Source: Macrostomum lignano (lineage: Eukaryota). Taken from it: a DNA stretch of 64,000 nucleotides. The stretch covers positions 186,001-250,000 of the forward strand of contig NIVC01001497.1 in the NCBI GenBank assembly GCA_002269645.1, in the 5' to 3' direction. Within the stretch, counting starts at the first letter, position 1. Each line of letters starts with the position of its first letter. The notes under the pieces were generated by a model that made no database searches, was not told the DNA's origin, and worked only from the letters and a program-made list of their open reading frames with translations. Below are positions 1 through 16,127 of the stretch, one piece after another. Both the position numbers and the translations under genes were made by a program.

Positions 1-1289
1 GATCTCCGCAGCCCGTCGCCGACTCCTGTAGCCTCATCTGGCGAGTTTCGCTCACAAGCATGTTGATGAAGTTGGCTGCAGATTTAGCAGCCGCACTGTC
101 AGTCAGTCCCTGCAGGCTGCAGTGAAAGAAGAAATTTATACAAAATTTGTTGCAAGATTAAAGCAGAATATGTCCCTCCCGACTTAAACACAGTGAAGAA
201 TTCGCAAGCGCGGGTTTAAAGTGTCAGAAGATTTCAGTATTTGCAGTGCAGCAATTCTAAGAAAGCTTCAGATGCCTTGCAACAGATAAGCTTGGAGAGA
301 GGCTGTGCAGTTTTGTCGGCTCTGCCATTTGCCACTGGACAGACTAAAGGAAAAAGCACTTGAATACTTAGGGCGAGGGATCTAGATAGAAAATTTCCCA
401 ACAGAATTGCCGATTGCTTATCCCCATTCTGCCCTCTCGGCCAGCTAATTGGATGAGGGGGAGGCTGACCCGAGCTGAGTGCTGGCCGAAAAAAGGGATA
501 GATAAAATATGCGCGCACAATACTCATGGGAGGCGGCCTTGCGGTTGTCTGCTTTAGATATGAGAGCATGAGAGCTATCGGAGATGGAGCTCAGAATCTG
601 CCCCAATCGGACTCATACACCGATAGCGATAGCATTATTCAGTCAGACTCCGACTTGAGCAGAGTGGCTTCTTTATCAACTGGTCCTGGCTTCTTCTAGG
701 AGCAATTTCTGTCTAGTCGGTGGCAGCCGGCCAGTCCAGACAGAACTCAATGAGATTCAGTCTGGGCCAGACGGGAGGCTGGAATTAAAGGACAAACTGG
801 CTTGGGGAGCAGCCGGCCTACCCGGATGCAATTTATATAGGAGAAGAGAAACTTTCCCCCTCAGTTTTTATCCTATTTCGACTTTAACTTGAGTTGACTT
901 GAGTTGAGTTGAGTGGCCTCTCAAACGTCTCCTTTCTGTCCCAGTTCGAGGAAGGAGAGAGGGAGAGAAAGCAAAACGAATAAACGTTCTCAGTCTCTTC
1001 CAACAGCTCCAGTGCTGTAGCAAACGAGTTTCCAATTCTTTCTACTGTTAAAGCTTGAGCCAAGATGGGTTCGGAGCCCTCTTCTTGCAGAAGCAGACGC
1101 AGGCCAGAAACGTAAAGCATATAATTTTGCGTTGCTGGGCAGGAAATACCAATCTCAAAGCCATCAGTATGGGGAGATTCTGGGGGATCAGGCAGGCACG
1201 CCTGGCTTATCAACCAGGGATTTTTGTCCCCCCCCAAACCCTCACTGTCATGAATAATTTTGCACAGCAGTTGCAGGTCCTGTTGGTCA

Positions 1290-1912
1290 TGCCCTGGGTC
1301 TGCTCTGGGTCTGCTCTGAGTTTGCTCTGGGTCTGCTCTGGGTCTGCTCTGGGTCTGCTCTGGGTCTGCTCTGAGTGTGCTCTGGGTCTGCTCTGGGTCT
1401 GCTCTGAGTGTGCTCTGGGTCTGGTCTGAGTGTGCTCTGGGTCTGCTCTGGGTCTGCTCTGAGTGTGCTCTGGGTCTGCTCTGGGTCTGCTCTGAGTGTG
1501 CTCTGGGTCTGGTCTGAGTGTGCTCTGGGTCTGCTCTGGGTCTGCTCTGAGTGTGCTCTGGGTCTGCTCTGGGTCTGCTCTGAGTGTGCTCTGGGTCTGG
1601 TCTGAGTGTGCTCTGGGTCTGCTCTGGGTCTGCTCTGAGTGTGCTCTGGGTCTGCTCTGAGTGTGCTCTGGGTCTGCTCTGAGTGTGCTCTGGGTCTGCT
1701 CTGAGTGTGCTCTGGGTCTGCTCTGAGTGTGCTCTGGGTCTGCTCTGAGTGTGCTCTGGGTCTGCTCTGAGTGTGCTCTGGGTCTGCTCTGAGTGTGCTC
1801 TGGGTCTGCTCTGAGTGTGCTCTGGTCTGCTCTGAGTGTGCTCTGGGTCTGCTCTGAGTGTGCTCTGGGTCTGCTCTGAGTGTGCTCTGGGTCTGGTCTA
1901 GGTCTGCTCTGG
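1290..1912. repeat. 11-bp minisatellite (TGCTCTGGGTC / TGCTCTGAGTG variants)
   Basis: Direct tandem periodicity of 11 nt; generates the RADP/HSEQT ORF-track artefacts. Confidence 0.95.
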
Positions 1913-2224
1913 GTGTAGCCGGTTGTTCAGCTTGACCTCGAATCTGACCAAAAGGGTGGGGCTCCCGACTCGGAGCTGTGCAGTGCACCAAGCGAGAGAG
2001 GGAAGTGCGATCCTCTACCGCCTGGAGGCGAGGGCGAAGCCGGAAGTAGCTGCTGTTTTAATCGCTGCCGGGAGGGGCATTGTGAAGGAACTTTTGCTCT
2101 TGCACAACAAAAACTAAAGGGTGAACATCCGGGGGGCATGAATTACTAAGTTGAGAGTGCTGGCTGGACTGATTATGATGCACCGGTTTTTATTGACAGC
2201 GATTAGTGTGACTGAAGGAAGAAG

Positions 2225-2660: not shown

Positions 2661-3424
2661 GTGTTTATTATTTCTCAGGACTTGTAAACTTGCAAAGGTA
2701 GAGAAAGTTTTGGTGTGAAACATCTCCCTTGTGCTTGGACTCTCCCCGCCTTGTACGCAGCTTCCTAAACCTCATCAGCCGTGACCAGGATTGAATTAGG
2801 AGGCTTTCATCGGACAGAAAGAGCGCTACTTCAAACAACTGGGTGACAGAAACACAGCAGTGTAATTCAATTCCGTACTGAGCCAGCGAAGAAGCCCTTC
2901 CGAGGTAAGTTATAGTTGAGAAGAAAAAAGTTGGGTGGGATGTCAAGGGACAGACCCTGAGACGGCGCAGTTTTGAAACCCGGAACTGCTCTCAAAGTGT
3001 TGCTGAGTGTCGTGCACTACCGTACATTGTGCACTTTCACTGGATAGTTTCTCTCAATCCGATGTCTTTGACTTCTCTTACCCTGCTTATCTCTACTACC
3101 CCCCTCAAGCCGGTCGCTGATTGGCTGGCTGTTGAATGTACATTCGCCCAAGGACCATTGTATATAACACGGCATAAAAATTAAAGATCGTGTAAATCTT
3201 TAGGAGGTCGATTTCCTGGAAAAATACACTGAGTAGATAGGAATAATCACTTTTTCAATCACAAAATTAATGATTTTGTTTGATCTAGGCAGTGAAGTTA
3301 CCGTATTTATATCTTAATATAGCTGCTGGAGTGAAAGTTTCTTCTCATATTGTTTTCTTTTTATTTCATAAGCCTCAAGTTGCAAATACTCATCCTCGTT
3401 GTCTGCGAGGAGAGAGGTGGATGA

Positions 3425-4125
3425 GAAGAGAGGAAAAGAGAGGAGAAGAGAGGAGAAGAGAGGAGAGGAGAGCAGAGAGGAGAGGAGAGGAGAGGAGAGG
3501 AGAGGAGAGGAGAGGAGAGGAGAGGAGAGGAGAGAGGAGAGGAGAGGAGAGGAGAGGAGAGGAGAGAAAAGAGGAGAGGAGAGAAGAGAGGAGAGGAGAG
3601 AAGAGAGGAGAGCAGAGAGGAGAGGAGAGGAGAGGAGAGGAGAGGAGAGGAGAGGAGAGGAGAGGAGAGGAGAGGAGAGGAGCGGAGAGGAGAGGAGAGG
3701 AGAGGAGAGGAGAGGAGAGGAGCAGAGAGGAGAGGAGAGGAGAGGAGAGGAGAGGAGAGGAGAGGAGAGGAGAGGAGAGGAGAGAGAAGAGGAGAGGAGA
3801 GGAGAGGAGAGGAGAGGAGAGAGAGAGAGGAGAGGAGAGGAGAGCAGAGAGGAGAGGAGAGGAGAAGAGAGGAGAGGAGAGGAGAGGAGAGGAGAGAGAG
3901 AGGAAAGGAGGAGAGCAGAGAGGAGAGGAGAGGAGAGGAGAGGAGAGGAGAGGAGAGGAGAGGAGAGGAGAGCAGAGAGGAGAGGAGAGGAGAAGAGAGG
4001 AGAAAAGAGGAAAGGAGAGGAGAGGAGAGAAGAGAGGAGAGAGGAGAGGAGAGGAGAGGAGAGAAGAGAGGAGAGGAGAGCAGAGAGGAGATAAAGGAGA
4101 GGAAAGTAAGGGAGAGGAGAGTACT
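3425..4125. repeat. (AGAGG)n polypurine microsatellite
   Basis: Pentamer repeat; the ERRG/SSPLL ORFs are artefacts. Confidence 0.97.
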
Positions 4126-4749
4126 GTGAAATCCTGACACGGATCAAATAAGCCATGCTCGCACAGCAACAGTTAGGGAGCAAACAAAAGCCTAAAGCTT
4201 ACCTGTTAGACCGCACGCTAGCTGGTGAGTGCAGATTCTAATGAAGTTGGCGGAAAGCTTGGCACCAGGAAGAGCTAATATAAAATTAGCTAGAACAGGG
4301 CTTTTGCCAGTAACGGTTTTGCTGATTCAGACAAACTCTCTGCGCAGTTATAATAGCGCCTTTTCCTGTGCAGAAAGCGGCGCTACTACATGTGGCTACA
4401 AATAAAATTTGCAGGAGCAAATCTGGGTCAAGCGAAGCCTGCGAGCCGAATAAGACCCCGGACTGCCCCGTGGAAAGAGGCGAGGCAGAGAAGATCGAGA
4501 GTCAGCCAGTGGCGAACGGATGCGTGGGCAAGGGGGAGGATTGGAGAAGTCTTATTTGGGGAGTTTGGATGGTAAGAGAGGGATGCCTGCTATAGGGGGG
4601 GGGGGGGGGCTCCCCCACACAGAGCTAAATTTAGAAGTTGGCGTCACAGAATTTTTTGGCTCGATTCCAATTGGCTTGAATGGCCTTGATGGCGGAAATA
4701 TTGAAGCCGGAGCTTTGGAGAGGGTAACAGTAGGGTAGGGTAGAGGGTA

Positions 4750-5078
4750 TGAAGGATCAGAGAGGATAGCGGTGCCCGCAGAAGGATCAGAGAGGATAGC
4801 GGTGCCCACAGAAGGATCAGAGAGGGTAGCGGTGCTCACAGAAGGATCAGAAAGGGTAGTGGTGTCCGCAGAAGGATCAGAAAGGGTAGTGGTGTCCGCA
4901 GAAGGATCAGAGAGGGTAGCGGTGCCCACAGAAGGATCAGAAAGGGTAGTGGTGCCCACAGAAGGATCAGAAAGGGTAGTGGTGTCCGCAGAAGGATCAG
5001 AAAGGGTAGTGGTGTCCGCAGAAGGATCAGAAAGGGTAGCGGTGTCCGCAGAAGGATCAGAGAGGATAGCGGTGCCAT
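4750..5078. repeat. 30-bp minisatellite (GAAGGATCAGAGAGGGTAGCGGTGCCCACA)
   Basis: About 11 tandem copies; shares GGGTAGCGGTG core with the 33-bp array at 2225. Confidence 0.93.
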
Positions 5079-6112: not shown

Positions 6113-6296
6113 CAGTCAGATCCCAGTTCCGAGTCCCGCTAGCCAGTCAGATCCTAGTTCCGAGTCCCGCTAGCCAGTCAGATCCCAGTTCCGAGTCCCG
6201 CTAGCCAGTCAGATCCCAGTTCCGAGTCCCGCTAGCCAGTCAGATCCCAGTTCCGAGTCCCGCTAGCCAGTCAGATCTCAGTTCCGAGTCTCGCTA
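6113..6296. repeat. 31-bp minisatellite in the oligopeptidase 3' UTR
   Basis: CAGTCAGATCCCAGTTCCGAGTCCCGCTAGC x about 6, starting within about 20 nt of the stop codon. Confidence 0.92.
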
Positions 6297-6312: not shown

Positions 6313-11339
<5,027 letters not shown>

Positions 11340-11744
11340 GGTAACCACTAGCAGGTTTAGCTTAGGCTGGACGGAGACGGACAGTCGGCAGTAGCGAGCA
11401 GAGCGGAACGCTAGGCGAGAGGAGATTGAAGCGAGCTGCGGGGAGGGCGGAAGATTGGGGGGGGCGTTGTTAGGGAATTTCACCTAGCTCATAAATCATA
11501 GCGAAATCATAAATCATCGACTATTCTGTTCTATCTAGCCGTGTTGAAATGCTTTAGCACTAGACTGATTGATCAACTACATGCATAGGCAGGCGGCGAA
11601 GCAGACGCTGCTGTCTATGTACAAAATTGAGCGCAGCACTGGTTGACCAGCTTACTAAATAAGGATTTATTTTGTGGGAAGCTACGTTGTGGGAAAATAT
11701 GTTAGTCAATGCTGATTATTGGTTTACCACGATTGACTGCGGAA

Positions 11745-11960
11745 CTTAACCCTTACTATAGACCAAGACCTAAGCTAAACTCTAATCTAAACTCAAAACT
11801 GAACTAAACCTAAAAAACTAACTTAAAATGTAACCCTAACCTAAAACTAACCTTAACCTAACCCTGACCTAAACCGAATCCTACCCTAAACCTAACCCTA
11901 ACCTAAAACCTGATCTTAACCTAAACTCTATCCTAAACCATAGTTACGCTCATATTAAAC
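11745..11960. repeat. Degenerate telomere-like (CCTAA/CCCTAA) tract
   Basis: Runs such as TAACCCTAACCTAAAACTAACCTTAACCTAACCCTG; intergenic between SPRTN stop and oligopeptidase start. Confidence 0.75.
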
Positions 11961-12642: not shown

Positions 12643-14085
12643 TCAGCTACTCAGGCACAAATCCAAGTGAACATTGATGTCGGACTCTGGCATTTGCCTG
12701 CTGCAAACTGGACAGCTGACCAGCTGCTGGCTGACTGCTCCTATGCTGGCGGCGCCACCGACGCCATTAAGAGTGCCACTGACGCCATTAGGAGCGCCAC
12801 CGACGCCCTTAGGACCGCCATCGACGCCATTAGAAGCGCCACCGAGGCCATTAGAAGCGCCACCGATGCCCTTAAGAGCGCCATCGACGCCATTAGGAGC
12901 GCCACCGATGCCATTAGGAGCGCCACCGACGCCCTTAAGAGCGCCACCGACGCGACTAAGAGCGCCACCGACGCCATTACCAGGGCCACCGACGTTGTTA
13001 TAGCTAGAGCTGCCACCGCTGCCGCCAAGTCGAATGCCGACACCAGGAAACGCGGCATCGGCGGTGCCGACGGCAGCAGACACGGCGGCGCTAACAGAGT
13101 CGGCAGAAGCGACGCAAACGGCGCCATCTGATTCAGCAATAGCAGGTCGCCAAGATTTCGACTCCACAGAACCTACAGAAGGATCTGGGCCGCTGCTAGC
13201 AGGCGAGGCGGGAATGAACTGCCGTATGTCCGTCTGTCCAGCAGCCGGCCGCTTCGCTGGCCGCTCCCGTTGCTCATCTTTGCCGCCGTCGGCAGCCCGA
13301 CTATTCTTCTTAGCCAACGGCTTCTTCTTATCGGCGAATCCTTCGGGCTCCTTGACTTTGACGAATCGGCCGCCGCAGTCGGCCTGATGACTGCGCCACC
13401 AGGTGTCGTTAGGCCCGGGCGCCCGGTTCATGGACCGGCGCACCCAGCCGTGGAATGGCGGCCGGTTCCGGCAGGGCCCCTCGCAGCGCCACCAGTGCTG
13501 CTTGTAGACGGCGACCTCGTCGTGAAAGCTGTGATAGACGGTGATGTTGGTGCCGGCAGCCGAGTTGATGCGGCGCATGTGCGCCAGAAACTGCGGCCCG
13601 TGCCCGTCACGGTCGCGATTATTGGCGGTGACAAACAGGTGCGCGTGAATCATCTCGTGCAGCAGGGTTTCGACTAAGTCGCGTCTGGGCCGCAGTTTGA
13701 GCAGCGGCTCGCTCAGTTTAATGCAGCAGAGGCCGCCGCGGCCCTCGTAGCAGCACAGGCCGGCGCACAGGGTCATGCGGGGGCTCCACTTCACCTCAAC
13801 TGCGACCAGGCTGCCGCCGAAGTAGCGCCCGTTGAAGTCCAGAAACAGGGCGTGCACATTGGGCGTGGGGTCCACCAGCTCCCAGTTGGGGTCCACTAGC
13901 GAGCCGCCCAACTCGTTGCTATTGGCAACGGCTGCCTTGCCTCTCTGCTTCGAGTCATCCTCCTCCTGCTCCTGGGAGGCCAGGCGCAGGCACAGCTCTC
14001 GGTCGGCCGCCTCCGACTGCTGCTCCTCCTGGCGGTCAAGCAGCTCGGCTTCCAGCTGCCACTGAAGCGCCTCTTCTGGGCTCCA
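12643..14085 (-). CDS. SPRTN: Spartan/SprT DNA-protein crosslink protease; single coding exon of 480 codons beginning at a splice acceptor, no genomic ATG
   Basis: SLVDPNWELVDPTP, HEMIH (HExxH), zinc-binding WWRCEGPC...HQADCGG, SHP box FPGVGIRLG, PIP-like QTDIRQFI, C-terminal UBZ4 CPVCSRQMPESDINVHLDLC. The frame is open to acceptor ctctctccaatctcttcag|TGG at 14085. Confidence 0.93.
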   Translation of the reverse strand, partial: WSPEEALQWQLEAELLDRQEEQQSEAADRELCLRLASQEQEEDDSKQRGKAAVANSNELGGSLVDPNWELVDPTPNVHALFLDFNGRYFGGSLVAVEVKWSPRMTLCAGLCCYEGRGGLCCIKLSEPLLKLRPRRDLVETLLHEMIHAHLFVTANNRDRDGHGPQFLAHMRRINSAAGTNITVYHSFHDEVAVYKQHWWRCEGPCRNRPPFHGWVRRSMNRAPGPNDTWWRSHQADCGGRFVKVKEPEGFADKKKPLAKKNSRAADGGKDEQRERPAKRPAAGQTDIRQFIPASPASSGPDPSVGSVESKSWRPAIAESDGAVCVASADSVSAAVSAAVGTADAAFPGVGIRLGGSGGSSSYNNVGGPGNGVGGALSRVGGALKGVGGAPNGIGGAPNGVDGALKGIGGASNGLGGASNGVDGGPKGVGGAPNGVSGTLNGVGGAASIGAVSQQLVSCPVCSRQMPESDINVHLDLCLSS

Positions 14086-14818: not shown

Positions 14819-16127
14819 CGAGGGTCACTCAGAAAGTTCTTAGCCTGAACACGAAAACAGCAACAAATGAACTAAAAAACGACTACAAGTGCTCAAAATA
14901 CTCTCCACCGGCATTGATACAGGCTTGCATCCTGTGAAACCAGCTGTCGAAGCAATGCCGCCAATCCTCATCCCGGAGCTCCTCGATGATGTTTTTGAAC
15001 TCATTTACAGCTTCTTCCGGTGAAGAAAAAACCTGGCCCTTCAGAATCTCCTTGCACTTCGGAAACAGAAAAAAGTCGCACGGTGCCAGGTCTGGACTGT
15101 AAGCAGGGTGAGTCATCAGCTAACCCCACAGTCAGCCAGAAACTCCAGAGTTTGAGCCGCCGTGTGCGCGCTGGCGTTGTCGTGGTGCAGAAGCACCCCA
15201 CGCATTCCGCACCTTGGGCGCCTCTGGCTCACAGCAGAAAAGACTTTGGGCAGGCAAACCGTTGTGTACCAGTCAGCGGTGACTGTCTGGCGATCTTCAA
15301 GTGAAACGGAAGCCACATGCCCAGTGCGCATGAAGAAACAGGCCACCATCTGCTTGCCGACACTCCGGCTGCGTCGAAACTTTGTGGGGCTGTCCTCGTC
15401 TCCAAAGGTCCACATGGCTGACTGGCGCTTGCTTTCGGGGTCGTATTGATAAATCCAGGTCTCATCGCCCGTGAGGATGTCCCAGATACGCCGGCTGGTC
15501 CCGGATTCGAATTTCTGCAGCATGAATCGGCACCAAGCCACCCTGGTGTCCTTCTGCACGTCCGACAGCTGATGGGGGATCCACCGGGAAGCCAGCTTCC
15601 GCACTCCAAGGTGTTCGTGCAGAATGGCGTGCACACTCCCCGATCCAATACCGATCTCCTGCTGGATCTGCTGGTAGGTCACTCGCCGGTCAGCGGCAAT
15701 CATGCTGGACACAGCGCAGATATTTTCTGGAGTCACTGCGTCACAGGGTCTCCCGGATCGATGTTCATCTTCGAGGCTTTCTCGACCTCGGCGAAACTCA
15801 GCGAACCAGTTTTTGACGGTTGCGTATGAAGGACATACATGGGTGAAAACGTTCTGTAAAGTTTGATACGATTCGGCCGGCGACTTGCCTTGCTTGAAGT
15901 GCAAGTACATCATTGCTCTGAAGTCGCGATTTTCCAGCTTCATTGTTGAATTGAAGAACTCAGGGGTTGAACTGACTTTAACTCGCTGCAGTGGACTCAA
16001 AAGTGGCTGCTTCTGTTTGAAATTTTTGCTGCGATACTTTTAAAAGTTGGTCTTTACCATAGACAAATTTCATGCTTCTACGTCTCGTGGATCCTACTCA
16101 GGCTAAATACTTTCTGAGTGACCCTCG
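14819..16127 (-). mobile_element. Tc1/mariner DNA transposon (DD34D mariner), 1309 bp
   Basis: 30-bp TIRs CGAGGGTCACTCAGAAAGT(TC/AT)TTAGCCTGA with 2 mismatches, TA duplication at 14817-18 and 16128-29, internal transposase. Confidence 0.96.
14883..15943 (-). pseudogene. Mariner transposase with a single 1-nt frameshift near 15120
   Basis: MKLENRDFRAMM start at 15943; RWIPHQL, TGDETW, HDNA and HPAYSPDLAPCD motifs; restoring one base gives exactly 34 residues between the 2nd and 3rd Asp. Confidence 0.9.

What the first reader, a model, noticed from the sequence alone, without database searches (positions are those of the whole stretch)
11339..11460. Hidden mitochondrial presequence with no ATG: spliced-leader AUG may create a mitochondrial isoform of the oligopeptidase
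Seen: 32 codons lie in frame upstream of the genomic ATG (11339), LASISSRLAFRSARYCRLSVSVQPKLNLLVVT, with 4 Arg, 1 Lys, many Ser/Leu/Ala and no acidic residue. They start exactly after a strong acceptor (aatcttccgccctccccgcag|CTC at 11435, phase 0). There is no in-frame ATG before the in-frame stop at 11484-86. Established: flatworm SL exons end in a conserved AUG that can act as initiator Met, and mammalian neurolysin makes mitochondrial and cytosolic forms from alternative starts. Inference: SL trans-splicing here gives MLASISSRLAFRSARYCRLS..., a textbook presequence, while the downstream AUG gives the cytosolic enzyme. Trans-splicing and leaky scanning would then act as a localisation switch.
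Basis: partly seen in the sequence, partly recalled or inferred. Interest (0 to 1): 0.88.

Follow-up and report, generated by a model that had tools for sequence, protein, structure and literature searches.

The report
Possible spliced-leader-started mitochondrial peptidase isoform
In the flatworm Macrostomum lignano, a peptidase gene has 32 open codons ahead of its own start codon that the trans-spliced leader's AUG could turn into a mitochondrial import signal; this is plausible and fits known flatworm biology, but it is not proven and not a new kind of mechanism.

Summary
The window is Macrostomum lignano. A four-exon M3 thimet-oligopeptidase/neurolysin-like gene lies on the minus strand. 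Its genomic ATG (11339) follows 32 stop-free, ATG-free, acid-free codons that begin exactly at the best local acceptor (…ccctccccgcag|CTC, 11435).

The M. lignano spliced leader ends in ATG, so joining at 11435 gives MLASISSRLAFRSARYCRL… in frame. All public gene models of this gene and its three near-identical copies are 5'-partial. They have no upstream exon, start 3-15 nt after that acceptor and already include the extension.

In favour of dual targeting: the SL AUG has a weak context, the genomic AUG is ACCATGG, and no ATG lies between them. Mollusc orthologues carry similar acid-free extensions ending at an internal Met.

Against: I could obtain no SL-junction read. The leader is 68% pyrimidine, so shuffles often give presequence-like peptides (4-25% of open frames). 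Codon usage is not CDS-like. The copies are too similar to test selection.

Each part of the mechanism has precedent: the SL AUG as initiator, mitochondrial and cytosolic variants from trans-spliced mRNAs, and neurolysin dual targeting. Verdict: partly supported, a new member of a known kind, moderate interest.

The parts
11436..11457 (-). 3' end of the putative outron: polypyrimidine tract and CAG acceptor (aatcttccgccctccccgcag)
   Evidence: Sequence read. It is the best acceptor among all AGs between 11681 and the ATG: CAG with 80% pyrimidine at -23..-4. It partly matches the M. lignano trans-splice motif [T/C]TNCAG.
11340..11435 (-). 32-codon in-frame leader, LASISSRLAFRSARYCRLSVSVQPKLNLLVVT. 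Candidate mitochondrial presequence if it is read from the SL AUG; otherwise 5' UTR.
   Evidence: Included in the public 5'-partial CDS models PAA67283.1, PAA54643.1, PAA63316.1 and PAA46881.1.
11337..11339 (-). Genomic ATG in the context ACCATGG; start of the presumed cytosolic 674-aa enzyme
   Evidence: It aligns with the N-termini of orthologues that lack an extension.
11484..11486 (-). In-frame TAG that closes the frame upstream, inside the putative outron
11005..11339 (-). Coding exon 1 of the M3 oligopeptidase, ending at donor AG|GTTAGC
   Evidence: The spliced product is identical to PAA67283.1 from its Met onward.
9499..10370 (-). Coding exon 2
7334..7797 (-). Coding exon 3; carries the HEFGH zinc-binding motif
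   Evidence: Pfam PF01432
6313..6666 (-). Coding exon 4, including the TGA stop
12643..13911 (-). Last large exon of the upstream same-strand SprT/Spartan-like gene. It ends about 1.2 kb before the acceptor and serves as context for where the outron or promoter lies.

Best explanation
The gene is the M. lignano thimet-oligopeptidase/neurolysin-like M3 peptidase (Mlig017280.g1). Its pre-mRNA is SL trans-spliced at the CAG acceptor ending at 11436. This removes an outron that holds six ATGs in its last 205 nt. The 35-nt SL ends in AUG, so the mature mRNA reads ...UUGCAUG|CUC GCU UCA..., and the first AUG is in frame with the peptidase.

Ribosomes that start at this weak-context SL AUG would make a 707-aa protein. 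Its first ~33 residues (MLASISSRLAFRSARYCRLSVSVQPKLNLLVVT) are basic and acid-free and could form an amphiphilic helix, so they could act as a mitochondrial presequence. Ribosomes that scan past it, with no other AUG in the way, would start at the strong ACCAUGG 96 nt downstream and make the 674-aa cytosolic enzyme.

Shown: the sequence anatomy, the SL sequence, the reading frame, and the boundaries and 5'-partial status of the public models. Inferred: trans-splicing at exactly this site, initiation at the SL AUG, mitochondrial import, and the balance between the two products.
For: 1. The anatomy is confirmed.
2. The SL ends in ATG.
3. Four independent-locus gene models are 5'-partial, lack any upstream exon and start 3-15 nt after the acceptor. 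The pipeline that made them cut transcripts at mapped SL-read peaks, and 30-39% of M. lignano genes are trans-spliced.
4. The SL AUG has a weak context, the genomic AUG a perfect Kozak context, and no AUG lies between them.
5. Mollusc orthologues (Crassostrea, Saccostrea, Haliotis, Mercenaria) carry 34-59-aa extensions with no acidic residue and net charge +6 to +8. Each ends at an internal Met just before the region of homology. The M. lignano extension has similar length and charge, and its position in the alignment corresponds.
6. Flatworm SL AUGs are reported to serve as initiator Met: in frame in 28% of S. mansoni trans-spliced transcripts and required by more than 40 cDNAs (PMC9851317). 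In E. granulosus, 143 of 187 SL-bearing clusters read as full length from the SL ATG (PMC3510090).
7. A longer neurolysin isoform with a cleavable mitochondrial targeting sequence and a shorter cytosolic isoform are known in mammals.
Against: - No SL-junction read, cDNA or peptide could be retrieved.
- The presequence-like composition largely follows from the 68%-pyrimidine leader. Among stop-free shuffles, 63% lack acidic residues, 25% also have net charge >= +5, and 4.4% match all four features.
- Synonymous codon use in the extension (CAI 0.44; three CTA Leu codons, a codon used for about 1% of Leu in the CDS) is below every 32-codon window of the CDS. It is also below expectation for the same peptide drawn from CDS usage (P = 0.006). 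The CDS itself shows a 5' ramp, with its first window lowest at 0.53, which softens this point.
- The four gene copies differ by only one substitution in the 96 nt (Asn/Lys), against 0.3-1.8% divergence in the flanks. Constraint therefore cannot be tested.
- The window copy's model starts 15 nt, not 0-3 nt, after the acceptor.
Confidence: 0.42

Rival explanations
1. The gene is SL trans-spliced at 11435, but the 96 nt are just a 5' UTR that happens to be open and in frame. The SL AUG is either mostly bypassed or adds a harmless N-terminal tail with no targeting role. The enzyme is made from the ACCATGG start and is cytosolic.
For: About one third of SL AUGs are in frame by chance; 28% were reported for S. 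mansoni. In shuffles, 22% are stop-free, and 4-25% of those look presequence-like. Codon usage in the extension is not CDS-like. The genomic ATG has a perfect Kozak context and aligns with the N-termini of orthologues that lack an extension.
Against: The first AUG of a capped mRNA is normally used at least in part, and flatworm SL AUGs are reported to function as initiators. The extension's length, charge and position in the alignment match the extensions of mollusc orthologues. The only substitution between copies adds a Lys.
Confidence: 0.4
2. The mRNA is not trans-spliced at 11435. Either transcription starts near or upstream of it and the region is an ordinary 5' UTR, or an unannotated upstream exon is cis-spliced to this acceptor and supplies its own ATG.
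For: No junction read was seen here. The window copy's model begins 15 nt downstream of the acceptor. The acceptor matches the published [T/C]TNCAG motif only in part. About 1.2 kb of intergenic DNA lies upstream and could hold a promoter or a small exon.
Against: Three copies' models begin 3 nt after the AG and none has an upstream exon, although the assembly was RNA-seq guided. An unspliced leader would carry six upstream ATGs within 205 nt. The strong polypyrimidine-CAG has no evident use other than as an acceptor.
Confidence: 0.13
3. The extension is translated from the SL AUG but serves another purpose, such as a different targeting signal, a membrane anchor, or regulation of translation of the main ORF.
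For: The C-terminal part of the extension (KLNLLVVT) is hydrophobic. Crude features cannot separate types of signal.
Against: There is no long hydrophobic core typical of a signal peptide. The Arg spacing and absence of acidic residues fit a matrix presequence better. For relatives of this enzyme, the extra compartment named in the literature I read is the mitochondrion.
Confidence: 0.05

Closest known systems
Flatworm SL 3'-terminal AUG used as initiator methionine (Cheng, Cohen, Ndegwa & Davis 2006, J Biol Chem 281:733; read only through PMC9851317, PMC3510090 and PMC12582326)
   Same: The SL ends in AUG, it is in frame with the recipient ORF, no genomic ATG exists for the N-terminal segment, and the public models are therefore 5'-partial.
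   Different: Here a strong genomic AUG lies 32 codons downstream, so two products are expected rather than one. Use of the SL AUG is not demonstrated for this gene or, as far as I could find, for any M. lignano gene.
Echinococcus granulosus thioredoxin glutathione reductase: mitochondrial and cytosolic variants from alternative trans-spliced mRNAs (Agorio et al. 2003; described in PMC2873472)
   Same: A flatworm, a single gene, mitochondrial and cytosolic isoforms that differ only at the N-terminus, and SL on the mRNAs.
   Different: In TGR, two different primary transcripts (core and intron promoters) are each trans-spliced, giving two mRNAs. Here a single trans-spliced mRNA with two start codons is proposed.
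Mammalian neurolysin (endopeptidase 24.16), an M3 family member with a longer isoform carrying a cleavable mitochondrial targeting sequence and a shorter cytosolic isoform (Kato et al. 1997, cited in PMC10607720)
   Same: Same enzyme family (Pfam PF01432; about 55% identity to vertebrate thimet oligopeptidase). Same layout: a presequence followed by the start of the cytosolic form.
   Different: According to the title of the cited paper, the mammalian isoforms arise by alternative promoter usage, and the upstream ATG is genomic. Here the upstream ATG would be supplied in trans by the SL.
Trypanosoma brucei isoleucyl-tRNA synthetase: dual targeting through alternative trans-splicing (PMC3273800)
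   Same: SL trans-splicing determines whether a mitochondrial presequence is part of the translated ORF.
   Different: In that paper the choice lies between alternative trans-splice sites, giving two mRNAs. Whether that SL supplies a start codon I did not check. Here one site is proposed, with the choice made by the ribosome.
Mollusc thimet-oligopeptidase-like proteins (Crassostrea virginica, Saccostrea cucullata, Haliotis spp., Mercenaria mercenaria models P0091, P0016, P0041/P0063, P0046)
   Same: Acid-free, net-positive N-terminal extensions of 34-59 aa that end at an internal Met just before the conserved LxWKLT region.
   Different: Their upstream Met is encoded in the genome. They are computational models, and their localisation is untested.

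Membership tests
Peptidase family M3 (thimet oligopeptidase / neurolysin) | Match to the Peptidase_M3 domain above the curated cut-off | tested here: met
   PF01432, 480.8 bits against a cut-off of 27, residues 248-700. 53-55% identity over 93% of the query to vertebrate thimet oligopeptidases.
Peptidase family M3 (thimet oligopeptidase / neurolysin) | HEXXH zinc-binding motif | tested here: met
   HEFGH is present in exon 3 of the spliced translation.
SL trans-spliced gene of M. lignano | [quoted passage not shown] | tested here: met
   CAG with an 80% pyrimidine tract, the best of all nearby AGs. None of the four RNA-seq-guided models has an upstream exon. The match to the [T/C]TNCAG motif is only partial.
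SL trans-spliced gene of M. lignano | Reads or cDNAs with the SL joined at the acceptor | not testable with these tools
   No M. lignano RNA-seq or EST data could be reached.
SL trans-spliced gene of M. lignano | Annotated mature 5' end coincides with the acceptor | tested here: met
   The models start 3 nt after the AG in L001-L003 and 15 nt after it in the window copy. The pipeline trimmed the SL and cut at SL-read peaks. This is indirect evidence.
SL-AUG-initiated ORF (Cheng et al. 2006 type) | SL ends in AUG | tested here: met
   The published 35-nt SL ends ...TTGCATG. The terminal ATG is noted for three Macrostomum species.
SL-AUG-initiated ORF (Cheng et al. 2006 type) | SL AUG in frame with the main ORF, with no intervening stop | tested here: met
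   The chance expectation is about one third times 0.22.
SL-AUG-initiated ORF (Cheng et al. 2006 type) | The N-terminal segment read from the SL AUG corresponds to the N-terminus of orthologues | tested here: inconclusive
   Mollusc orthologues have extensions of the same kind and position, but with no residue-level similarity. Other orthologues (a chiton, vertebrate THOP1) start near the genomic Met.
SL-AUG-initiated ORF (Cheng et al. 2006 type) | Translation actually starts at the SL AUG | not testable with these tools
   Needs initiation-site ribosome profiling, N-terminal proteomics or reporter constructs.
Mitochondrial matrix-targeting presequence | Acid-free, net-positive segment of 20-60 residues able to form an amphiphilic helix | tested here: inconclusive
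   No acidic residue, net +5 (+6 in the other copies), maximum hydrophobic moment 0.46. This lies within the range of the mollusc extensions. However, 4-25% of stop-free shuffles of the same DNA do as well. No trained predictor (TargetP, MitoFates) was available.
Mitochondrial matrix-targeting presequence | Import into mitochondria and cleavage by the processing peptidase | not testable with these tools
   A possible R-2 site (CRL|SV) is visible by eye only. An experiment is required.
Dual targeting by leaky scanning between two in-frame AUGs | Weak-context first AUG, strong-context second AUG, no AUG between them | tested here: met
   TTGCATGC against ACCATGG, with no ATG in the 96 nt in any frame. 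The last point alone has P = 0.48 by shuffle.
Dual targeting by leaky scanning between two in-frame AUGs | Two protein isoforms in two compartments | not testable with these tools
   Needs fractionation and immunoblotting, or tagged transgenes.

The most novel reading that the evidence does not exclude
In M. lignano the mitochondrial pool of the only thimet-oligopeptidase/neurolysin-type peptidase depends entirely on an initiator codon that is absent from the gene and supplied in trans by the spliced leader. One trans-spliced mRNA then gives both isoforms by leaky scanning. The efficiency of trans-splicing and of SL-AUG recognition would set the mitochondrial-to-cytosolic ratio. The same logic could apply to many dual-localised flatworm proteins whose public gene models are '5'-partial'.
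Probability: 0.3. Interest if true: 0.55.

Novelty: new member of a known kind. Interest (0 to 1): 0.36.

Why it matters
If true, this would be a clean, testable example of a spliced leader supplying the start codon for an organelle-targeting signal. M. lignano is the only flatworm with stable transgenesis so far (PMC8629364), so the test is practical. It would also explain why many M. lignano gene models lack a start codon, and it warns annotators that trimming the SL, including its ATG, hides real N-termini. The idea combines mechanisms already documented separately: the SL AUG as initiator, mitochondrial and cytosolic variants from trans-spliced mRNAs, and neurolysin dual targeting. A specialist would find it neat rather than surprising.

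Tried and rejected
1. Two protein searches with only the N-terminal 157-221 residues, one including the SL-encoded peptide, aimed to find transcript-derived fragments from M. lignano or other Macrostomum species. They returned nothing useful and did not even recover the known full-length models. This probably reflects a limit of the word index for short queries.
3. The gene IDs Mlig017280, Mlig009140 and Mlig010608 do not occur in any held paper or supplement.
4. The HMMER search of cluster representatives gave many relatives. The ten I looked up carried no usable taxon names, so flatworm orthologues could not be picked out.
5. The comparison of the four gene copies found one substitution in the 96 nt against 0.3-1.8% background divergence, which gives no power to test selection.
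6. S. mansoni phytochelatin synthase looked like a precedent, but its mitochondrial and cytosolic forms come from cis alternative splicing, and the authors found no trans-splicing.
7. The operon idea: the upstream SprT-like gene ends about 1.2 kb away, above the 1-kb repeat-adjusted threshold used for M. lignano operons. I do not claim an operon.

Full report
**What the window is.**
The best protein matches to the gene at the finding are Macrostomum lignano entries. The window is identical to part of GenBank contig NIVC01001497.1 of assembly GCA_002269645.1. The gene lies on the minus strand and has four coding exons with canonical GT-AG introns: 11339-11005, 10370-9499, 7797-7334 and 6666-6313. 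It encodes 674 residues from the genomic ATG. The protein matches Pfam Peptidase_M3 at 481 bits, carries HEFGH, and is 53-55% identical to vertebrate thimet oligopeptidases over 93% of the query.

**Checking the observation.**
All the stated facts hold.
- The ATG is at 11339.
- 32 in-frame codons at 11435-11340 read LASISSRLAFRSARYCRLSVSVQPKLNLLVVT, with four Arg, one Lys and no Asp or Glu.
- The preceding sequence is aatcttccgccctccccgcag, so CTC at 11435 is the first exon base in phase 0.
- The frame is closed upstream by TAG at 11486-11484, with no in-frame ATG in between.
- I enumerated every AG from 11681 down to the ATG. The acceptor at 11435 is the only CAG with an 80% pyrimidine tract. 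The next AG downstream (11410) would put an SL AUG out of frame and give an 18-codon uORF.

**Is it more than chance?**
The 96 nt are 68% pyrimidine (C38 T27 G18 A13). In 40,000 dinucleotide-preserving shuffles, 22% were stop-free. Among the stop-free shuffles:
- 63% had no acidic residue;
- 29% had net charge >= +5;
- 54% had at least the observed Ala+Leu+Arg+Ser fraction;
- 14% reached the observed hydrophobic moment;
- 4.4% reached all four features together, and 25% had both no acidic residue and net >= +5.

So 'no acidic residue, rich in Ser/Leu/Ala/Arg' is largely what a C/T-rich leader encodes in any open frame. With the one-in-three chance of being in frame, about 0.3-2% of trans-spliced genes would look like this by chance. 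That is not negligible in a genome with more than 20,000 trans-spliced genes. The absence of any ATG in the leader has P = 0.48 by shuffle.

**Is the mRNA trans-spliced here, and would the SL AUG be in frame?**
The single M. lignano SL is CGGTCTCTTACTGCGAAGACTCAATTTATTGCATG, followed in the SL RNA gene by GTAAG (PMC8629364). The SL is highly conserved in M. cliftonense and M. hystrix, and its final ATG is noted there as a likely translation start codon (PMC10468722). Joined at 11435, the mRNA reads ...TTGC ATG CTC GCT..., which is in frame.

The window gene (PAA67283.1, Mlig017280g1) and three near-identical copies elsewhere in the assembly (PAA54643.1, PAA63316.1, PAA46881.1) are all flagged 'partial'. 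None has an upstream exon. Their proteins begin SRLAF... (window copy) or ASISS... (the other three). That places their starts 15 nt and 3 nt after the AG. The UniProt models from the earlier assembly begin LASISS or QLASISS.

The NCBI annotation came from an RNA-seq-guided assembly in which SL-containing reads were trimmed and mapped. Transcripts were then cut at the resulting peaks, and ORFs were called afterwards (PMC5730564). A start-less CDS beginning right after a strong acceptor is what that pipeline yields for a trans-spliced mRNA whose ORF is open to the SL. I rate trans-splicing at this site as likely (about 0.8) but not shown.

An unspliced leader would carry six ATGs in the last 205 nt. 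This fits removal of an outron. The upstream same-strand SprT/Spartan-like gene ends about 1.2 kb away. That is beyond the 1-kb threshold used for M. lignano operons, so I do not invoke an operon.

**Would both AUGs be used?**
The SL AUG has T at -3 and C at +4. The genomic AUG sits in ACCATGG, and no AUG lies between them. This is the classical layout for leaky scanning. It argues that the genomic ATG is a genuine start, and that the first AUG is unlikely to capture all ribosomes.

Flatworm SL AUGs are reported to serve as initiators. [quoted passage not shown] 2006, as summarised in PMC9851317). [quoted passage not shown] Ten of the 15 SL-library orthologues of S. japonicum genes that use the SL AUG would do so too (PMC3510090).

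**Is the extension a presequence?**
For:
- It has no acidic residue and net charge +5 (+6 in the other copies).
- The Arg residues fall at positions 8, 12, 15 and 18, on one helical face, with a maximum 18-residue hydrophobic moment of 0.46.
- Mollusc orthologues have N-terminal extensions of 34-59 residues with no acidic residue and net charge +6 to +8. Each ends at an internal Met 7-10 residues before the conserved LxWKLT segment.
- In the alignment, the M. lignano extension and its genomic Met fall in the corresponding place. A chiton orthologue and newt THOP1 start near that Met without an extension.
- Mammalian neurolysin has a longer isoform with a cleavable mitochondrial targeting sequence and a shorter cytosolic isoform.

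Against:
- The composition null above.
- No residue-level similarity to the mollusc extensions.
- Codon usage: the extension's CAI is 0.44 relative to this gene plus the neighbouring ORF. Every 32-codon window of the CDS scores 0.53-0.9, and the same peptide drawn from CDS codon usage averages 0.65 (P = 0.006). Three Leu residues use CTA, which accounts for about 1% of Leu codons in the CDS.
- The lowest CDS window is the first one. A 5' ramp could therefore explain part of the low CAI.

Selection cannot be tested with the four copies. They differ by a single substitution in the 96 nt (AAC/AAA, Asn/Lys), against 0.3-1.8% divergence in flanking non-coding DNA.

**Comparison with what is known.**
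Each element has precedent:
- the SL AUG as initiator Met in flatworms (Cheng 2006);
- mitochondrial and cytosolic variants of one flatworm gene on trans-spliced mRNAs (E. granulosus TGR, Agorio 2003), produced there from two promoters (PMC2873472);
- alternative trans-splicing mediating dual targeting in T. brucei IleRS (PMC3273800);
- dual targeting of neurolysin by alternative promoter usage (Kato 1997).

The specific combination here would be one trans-spliced mRNA, a presequence whose only initiator comes from the SL, and a choice made by scanning ribosomes. I did not find it described in the literature searched. It is a recombination of known parts and remains unverified. The extension is also already present in public protein records as part of 5'-partial CDSs. 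I therefore class this as a new member of a known kind.

**Verdict.**
My estimates are about 0.8 that the site is trans-spliced, about 0.7 that the SL AUG is used to some extent, and about 0.6-0.7 that the resulting extension targets mitochondria. Together these give roughly 0.4 for the full model. The main rival is an in-frame but functionless leader, which I also put at about 0.4. Interest is moderate at 0.36. The hypothesis is cheap to test, using a junction-read search, the M. cliftonense and M. hystrix orthologues, and GFP fusions in a transgenic-capable flatworm. It would be a tidy example rather than a surprise.

Noticed in passing
window 7824-9399 (intron 2 of the peptidase gene): A 1.6-kb tandem array of a 14/29-bp unit (about 110 copies, 89-94% matches) fills most of intron 2. 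It produces long spurious ORFs on the minus strand. The gene spans 5.1 kb here but only 3.6-4.0 kb in the other three copies, so the intronic arrays probably differ in size between copies.
   Followed up: partly
window 6717-7307 (intron 3), 10466-10899 (intron 1) and 6113-6296 (just after the stop codon at 6313): An (AGAC)n microsatellite of about 148 copies in intron 3, a 28/57-bp repeat array in intron 1, and six copies of a 31-bp repeat starting 17 nt after the stop codon in the 3' UTR. Every intron of this gene, and its 3' UTR, carries a tandem array.
   Followed up: no
window 11760-11950, minus strand (intergenic, between the SprT-like gene and the peptidase): About 190 bp of degenerate TTAGGG-like units (gttagggttaggtttagggtagg...). 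It looks like an interstitial telomere-like repeat. TRF did not report it at score >= 150.
   Followed up: no
window 12643-13911, minus strand: An upstream neighbour encoding a SprT-like/Spartan zinc-binding-domain protein (Pfam PF10263, PF22934). Its C-terminal part contains a 21-bp in-frame tandem repeat (12752-12994, 11.6 copies) encoding Gly/Ala/Pro/Asn-rich repeats. The gene order tRNA-synthetase-like, SprT-like, peptidase, SCHIP-1-like recurs in the other copies, but no single copy's annotation shows all four genes.
   Followed up: partly
window 15116-16000 (and 14883-15116), minus strand: A mariner/Mos1-type transposase ORF (HTH_48, HTH_32, partial DDE domain). It appears split by a frameshift or stop into two adjacent ORFs, so it is probably a decayed copy.
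   Followed up: partly
window 1285-1914, 2224-2664, 3423-4121, 4751-5076: Four further tandem arrays with periods of 22/33, 33, 5 and 30 bp lie downstream of the peptidase gene. They create long low-complexity ORFs on both strands, for example the Glu/Arg-rich 281-aa ORF at 3292-4137. These ORFs should not be taken for genes.
   Followed up: no
P0128 (not in the window): The top hit of the representative search was a 7,248-aa protein labelled as from an Elusimicrobiota MAG ('Mpv17/PMP22 family protein'). It has four stretches matching the M3 peptidase at 40% identity. It is probably a fused or chimeric gene call, possibly from a eukaryotic contaminant.
   Followed up: no
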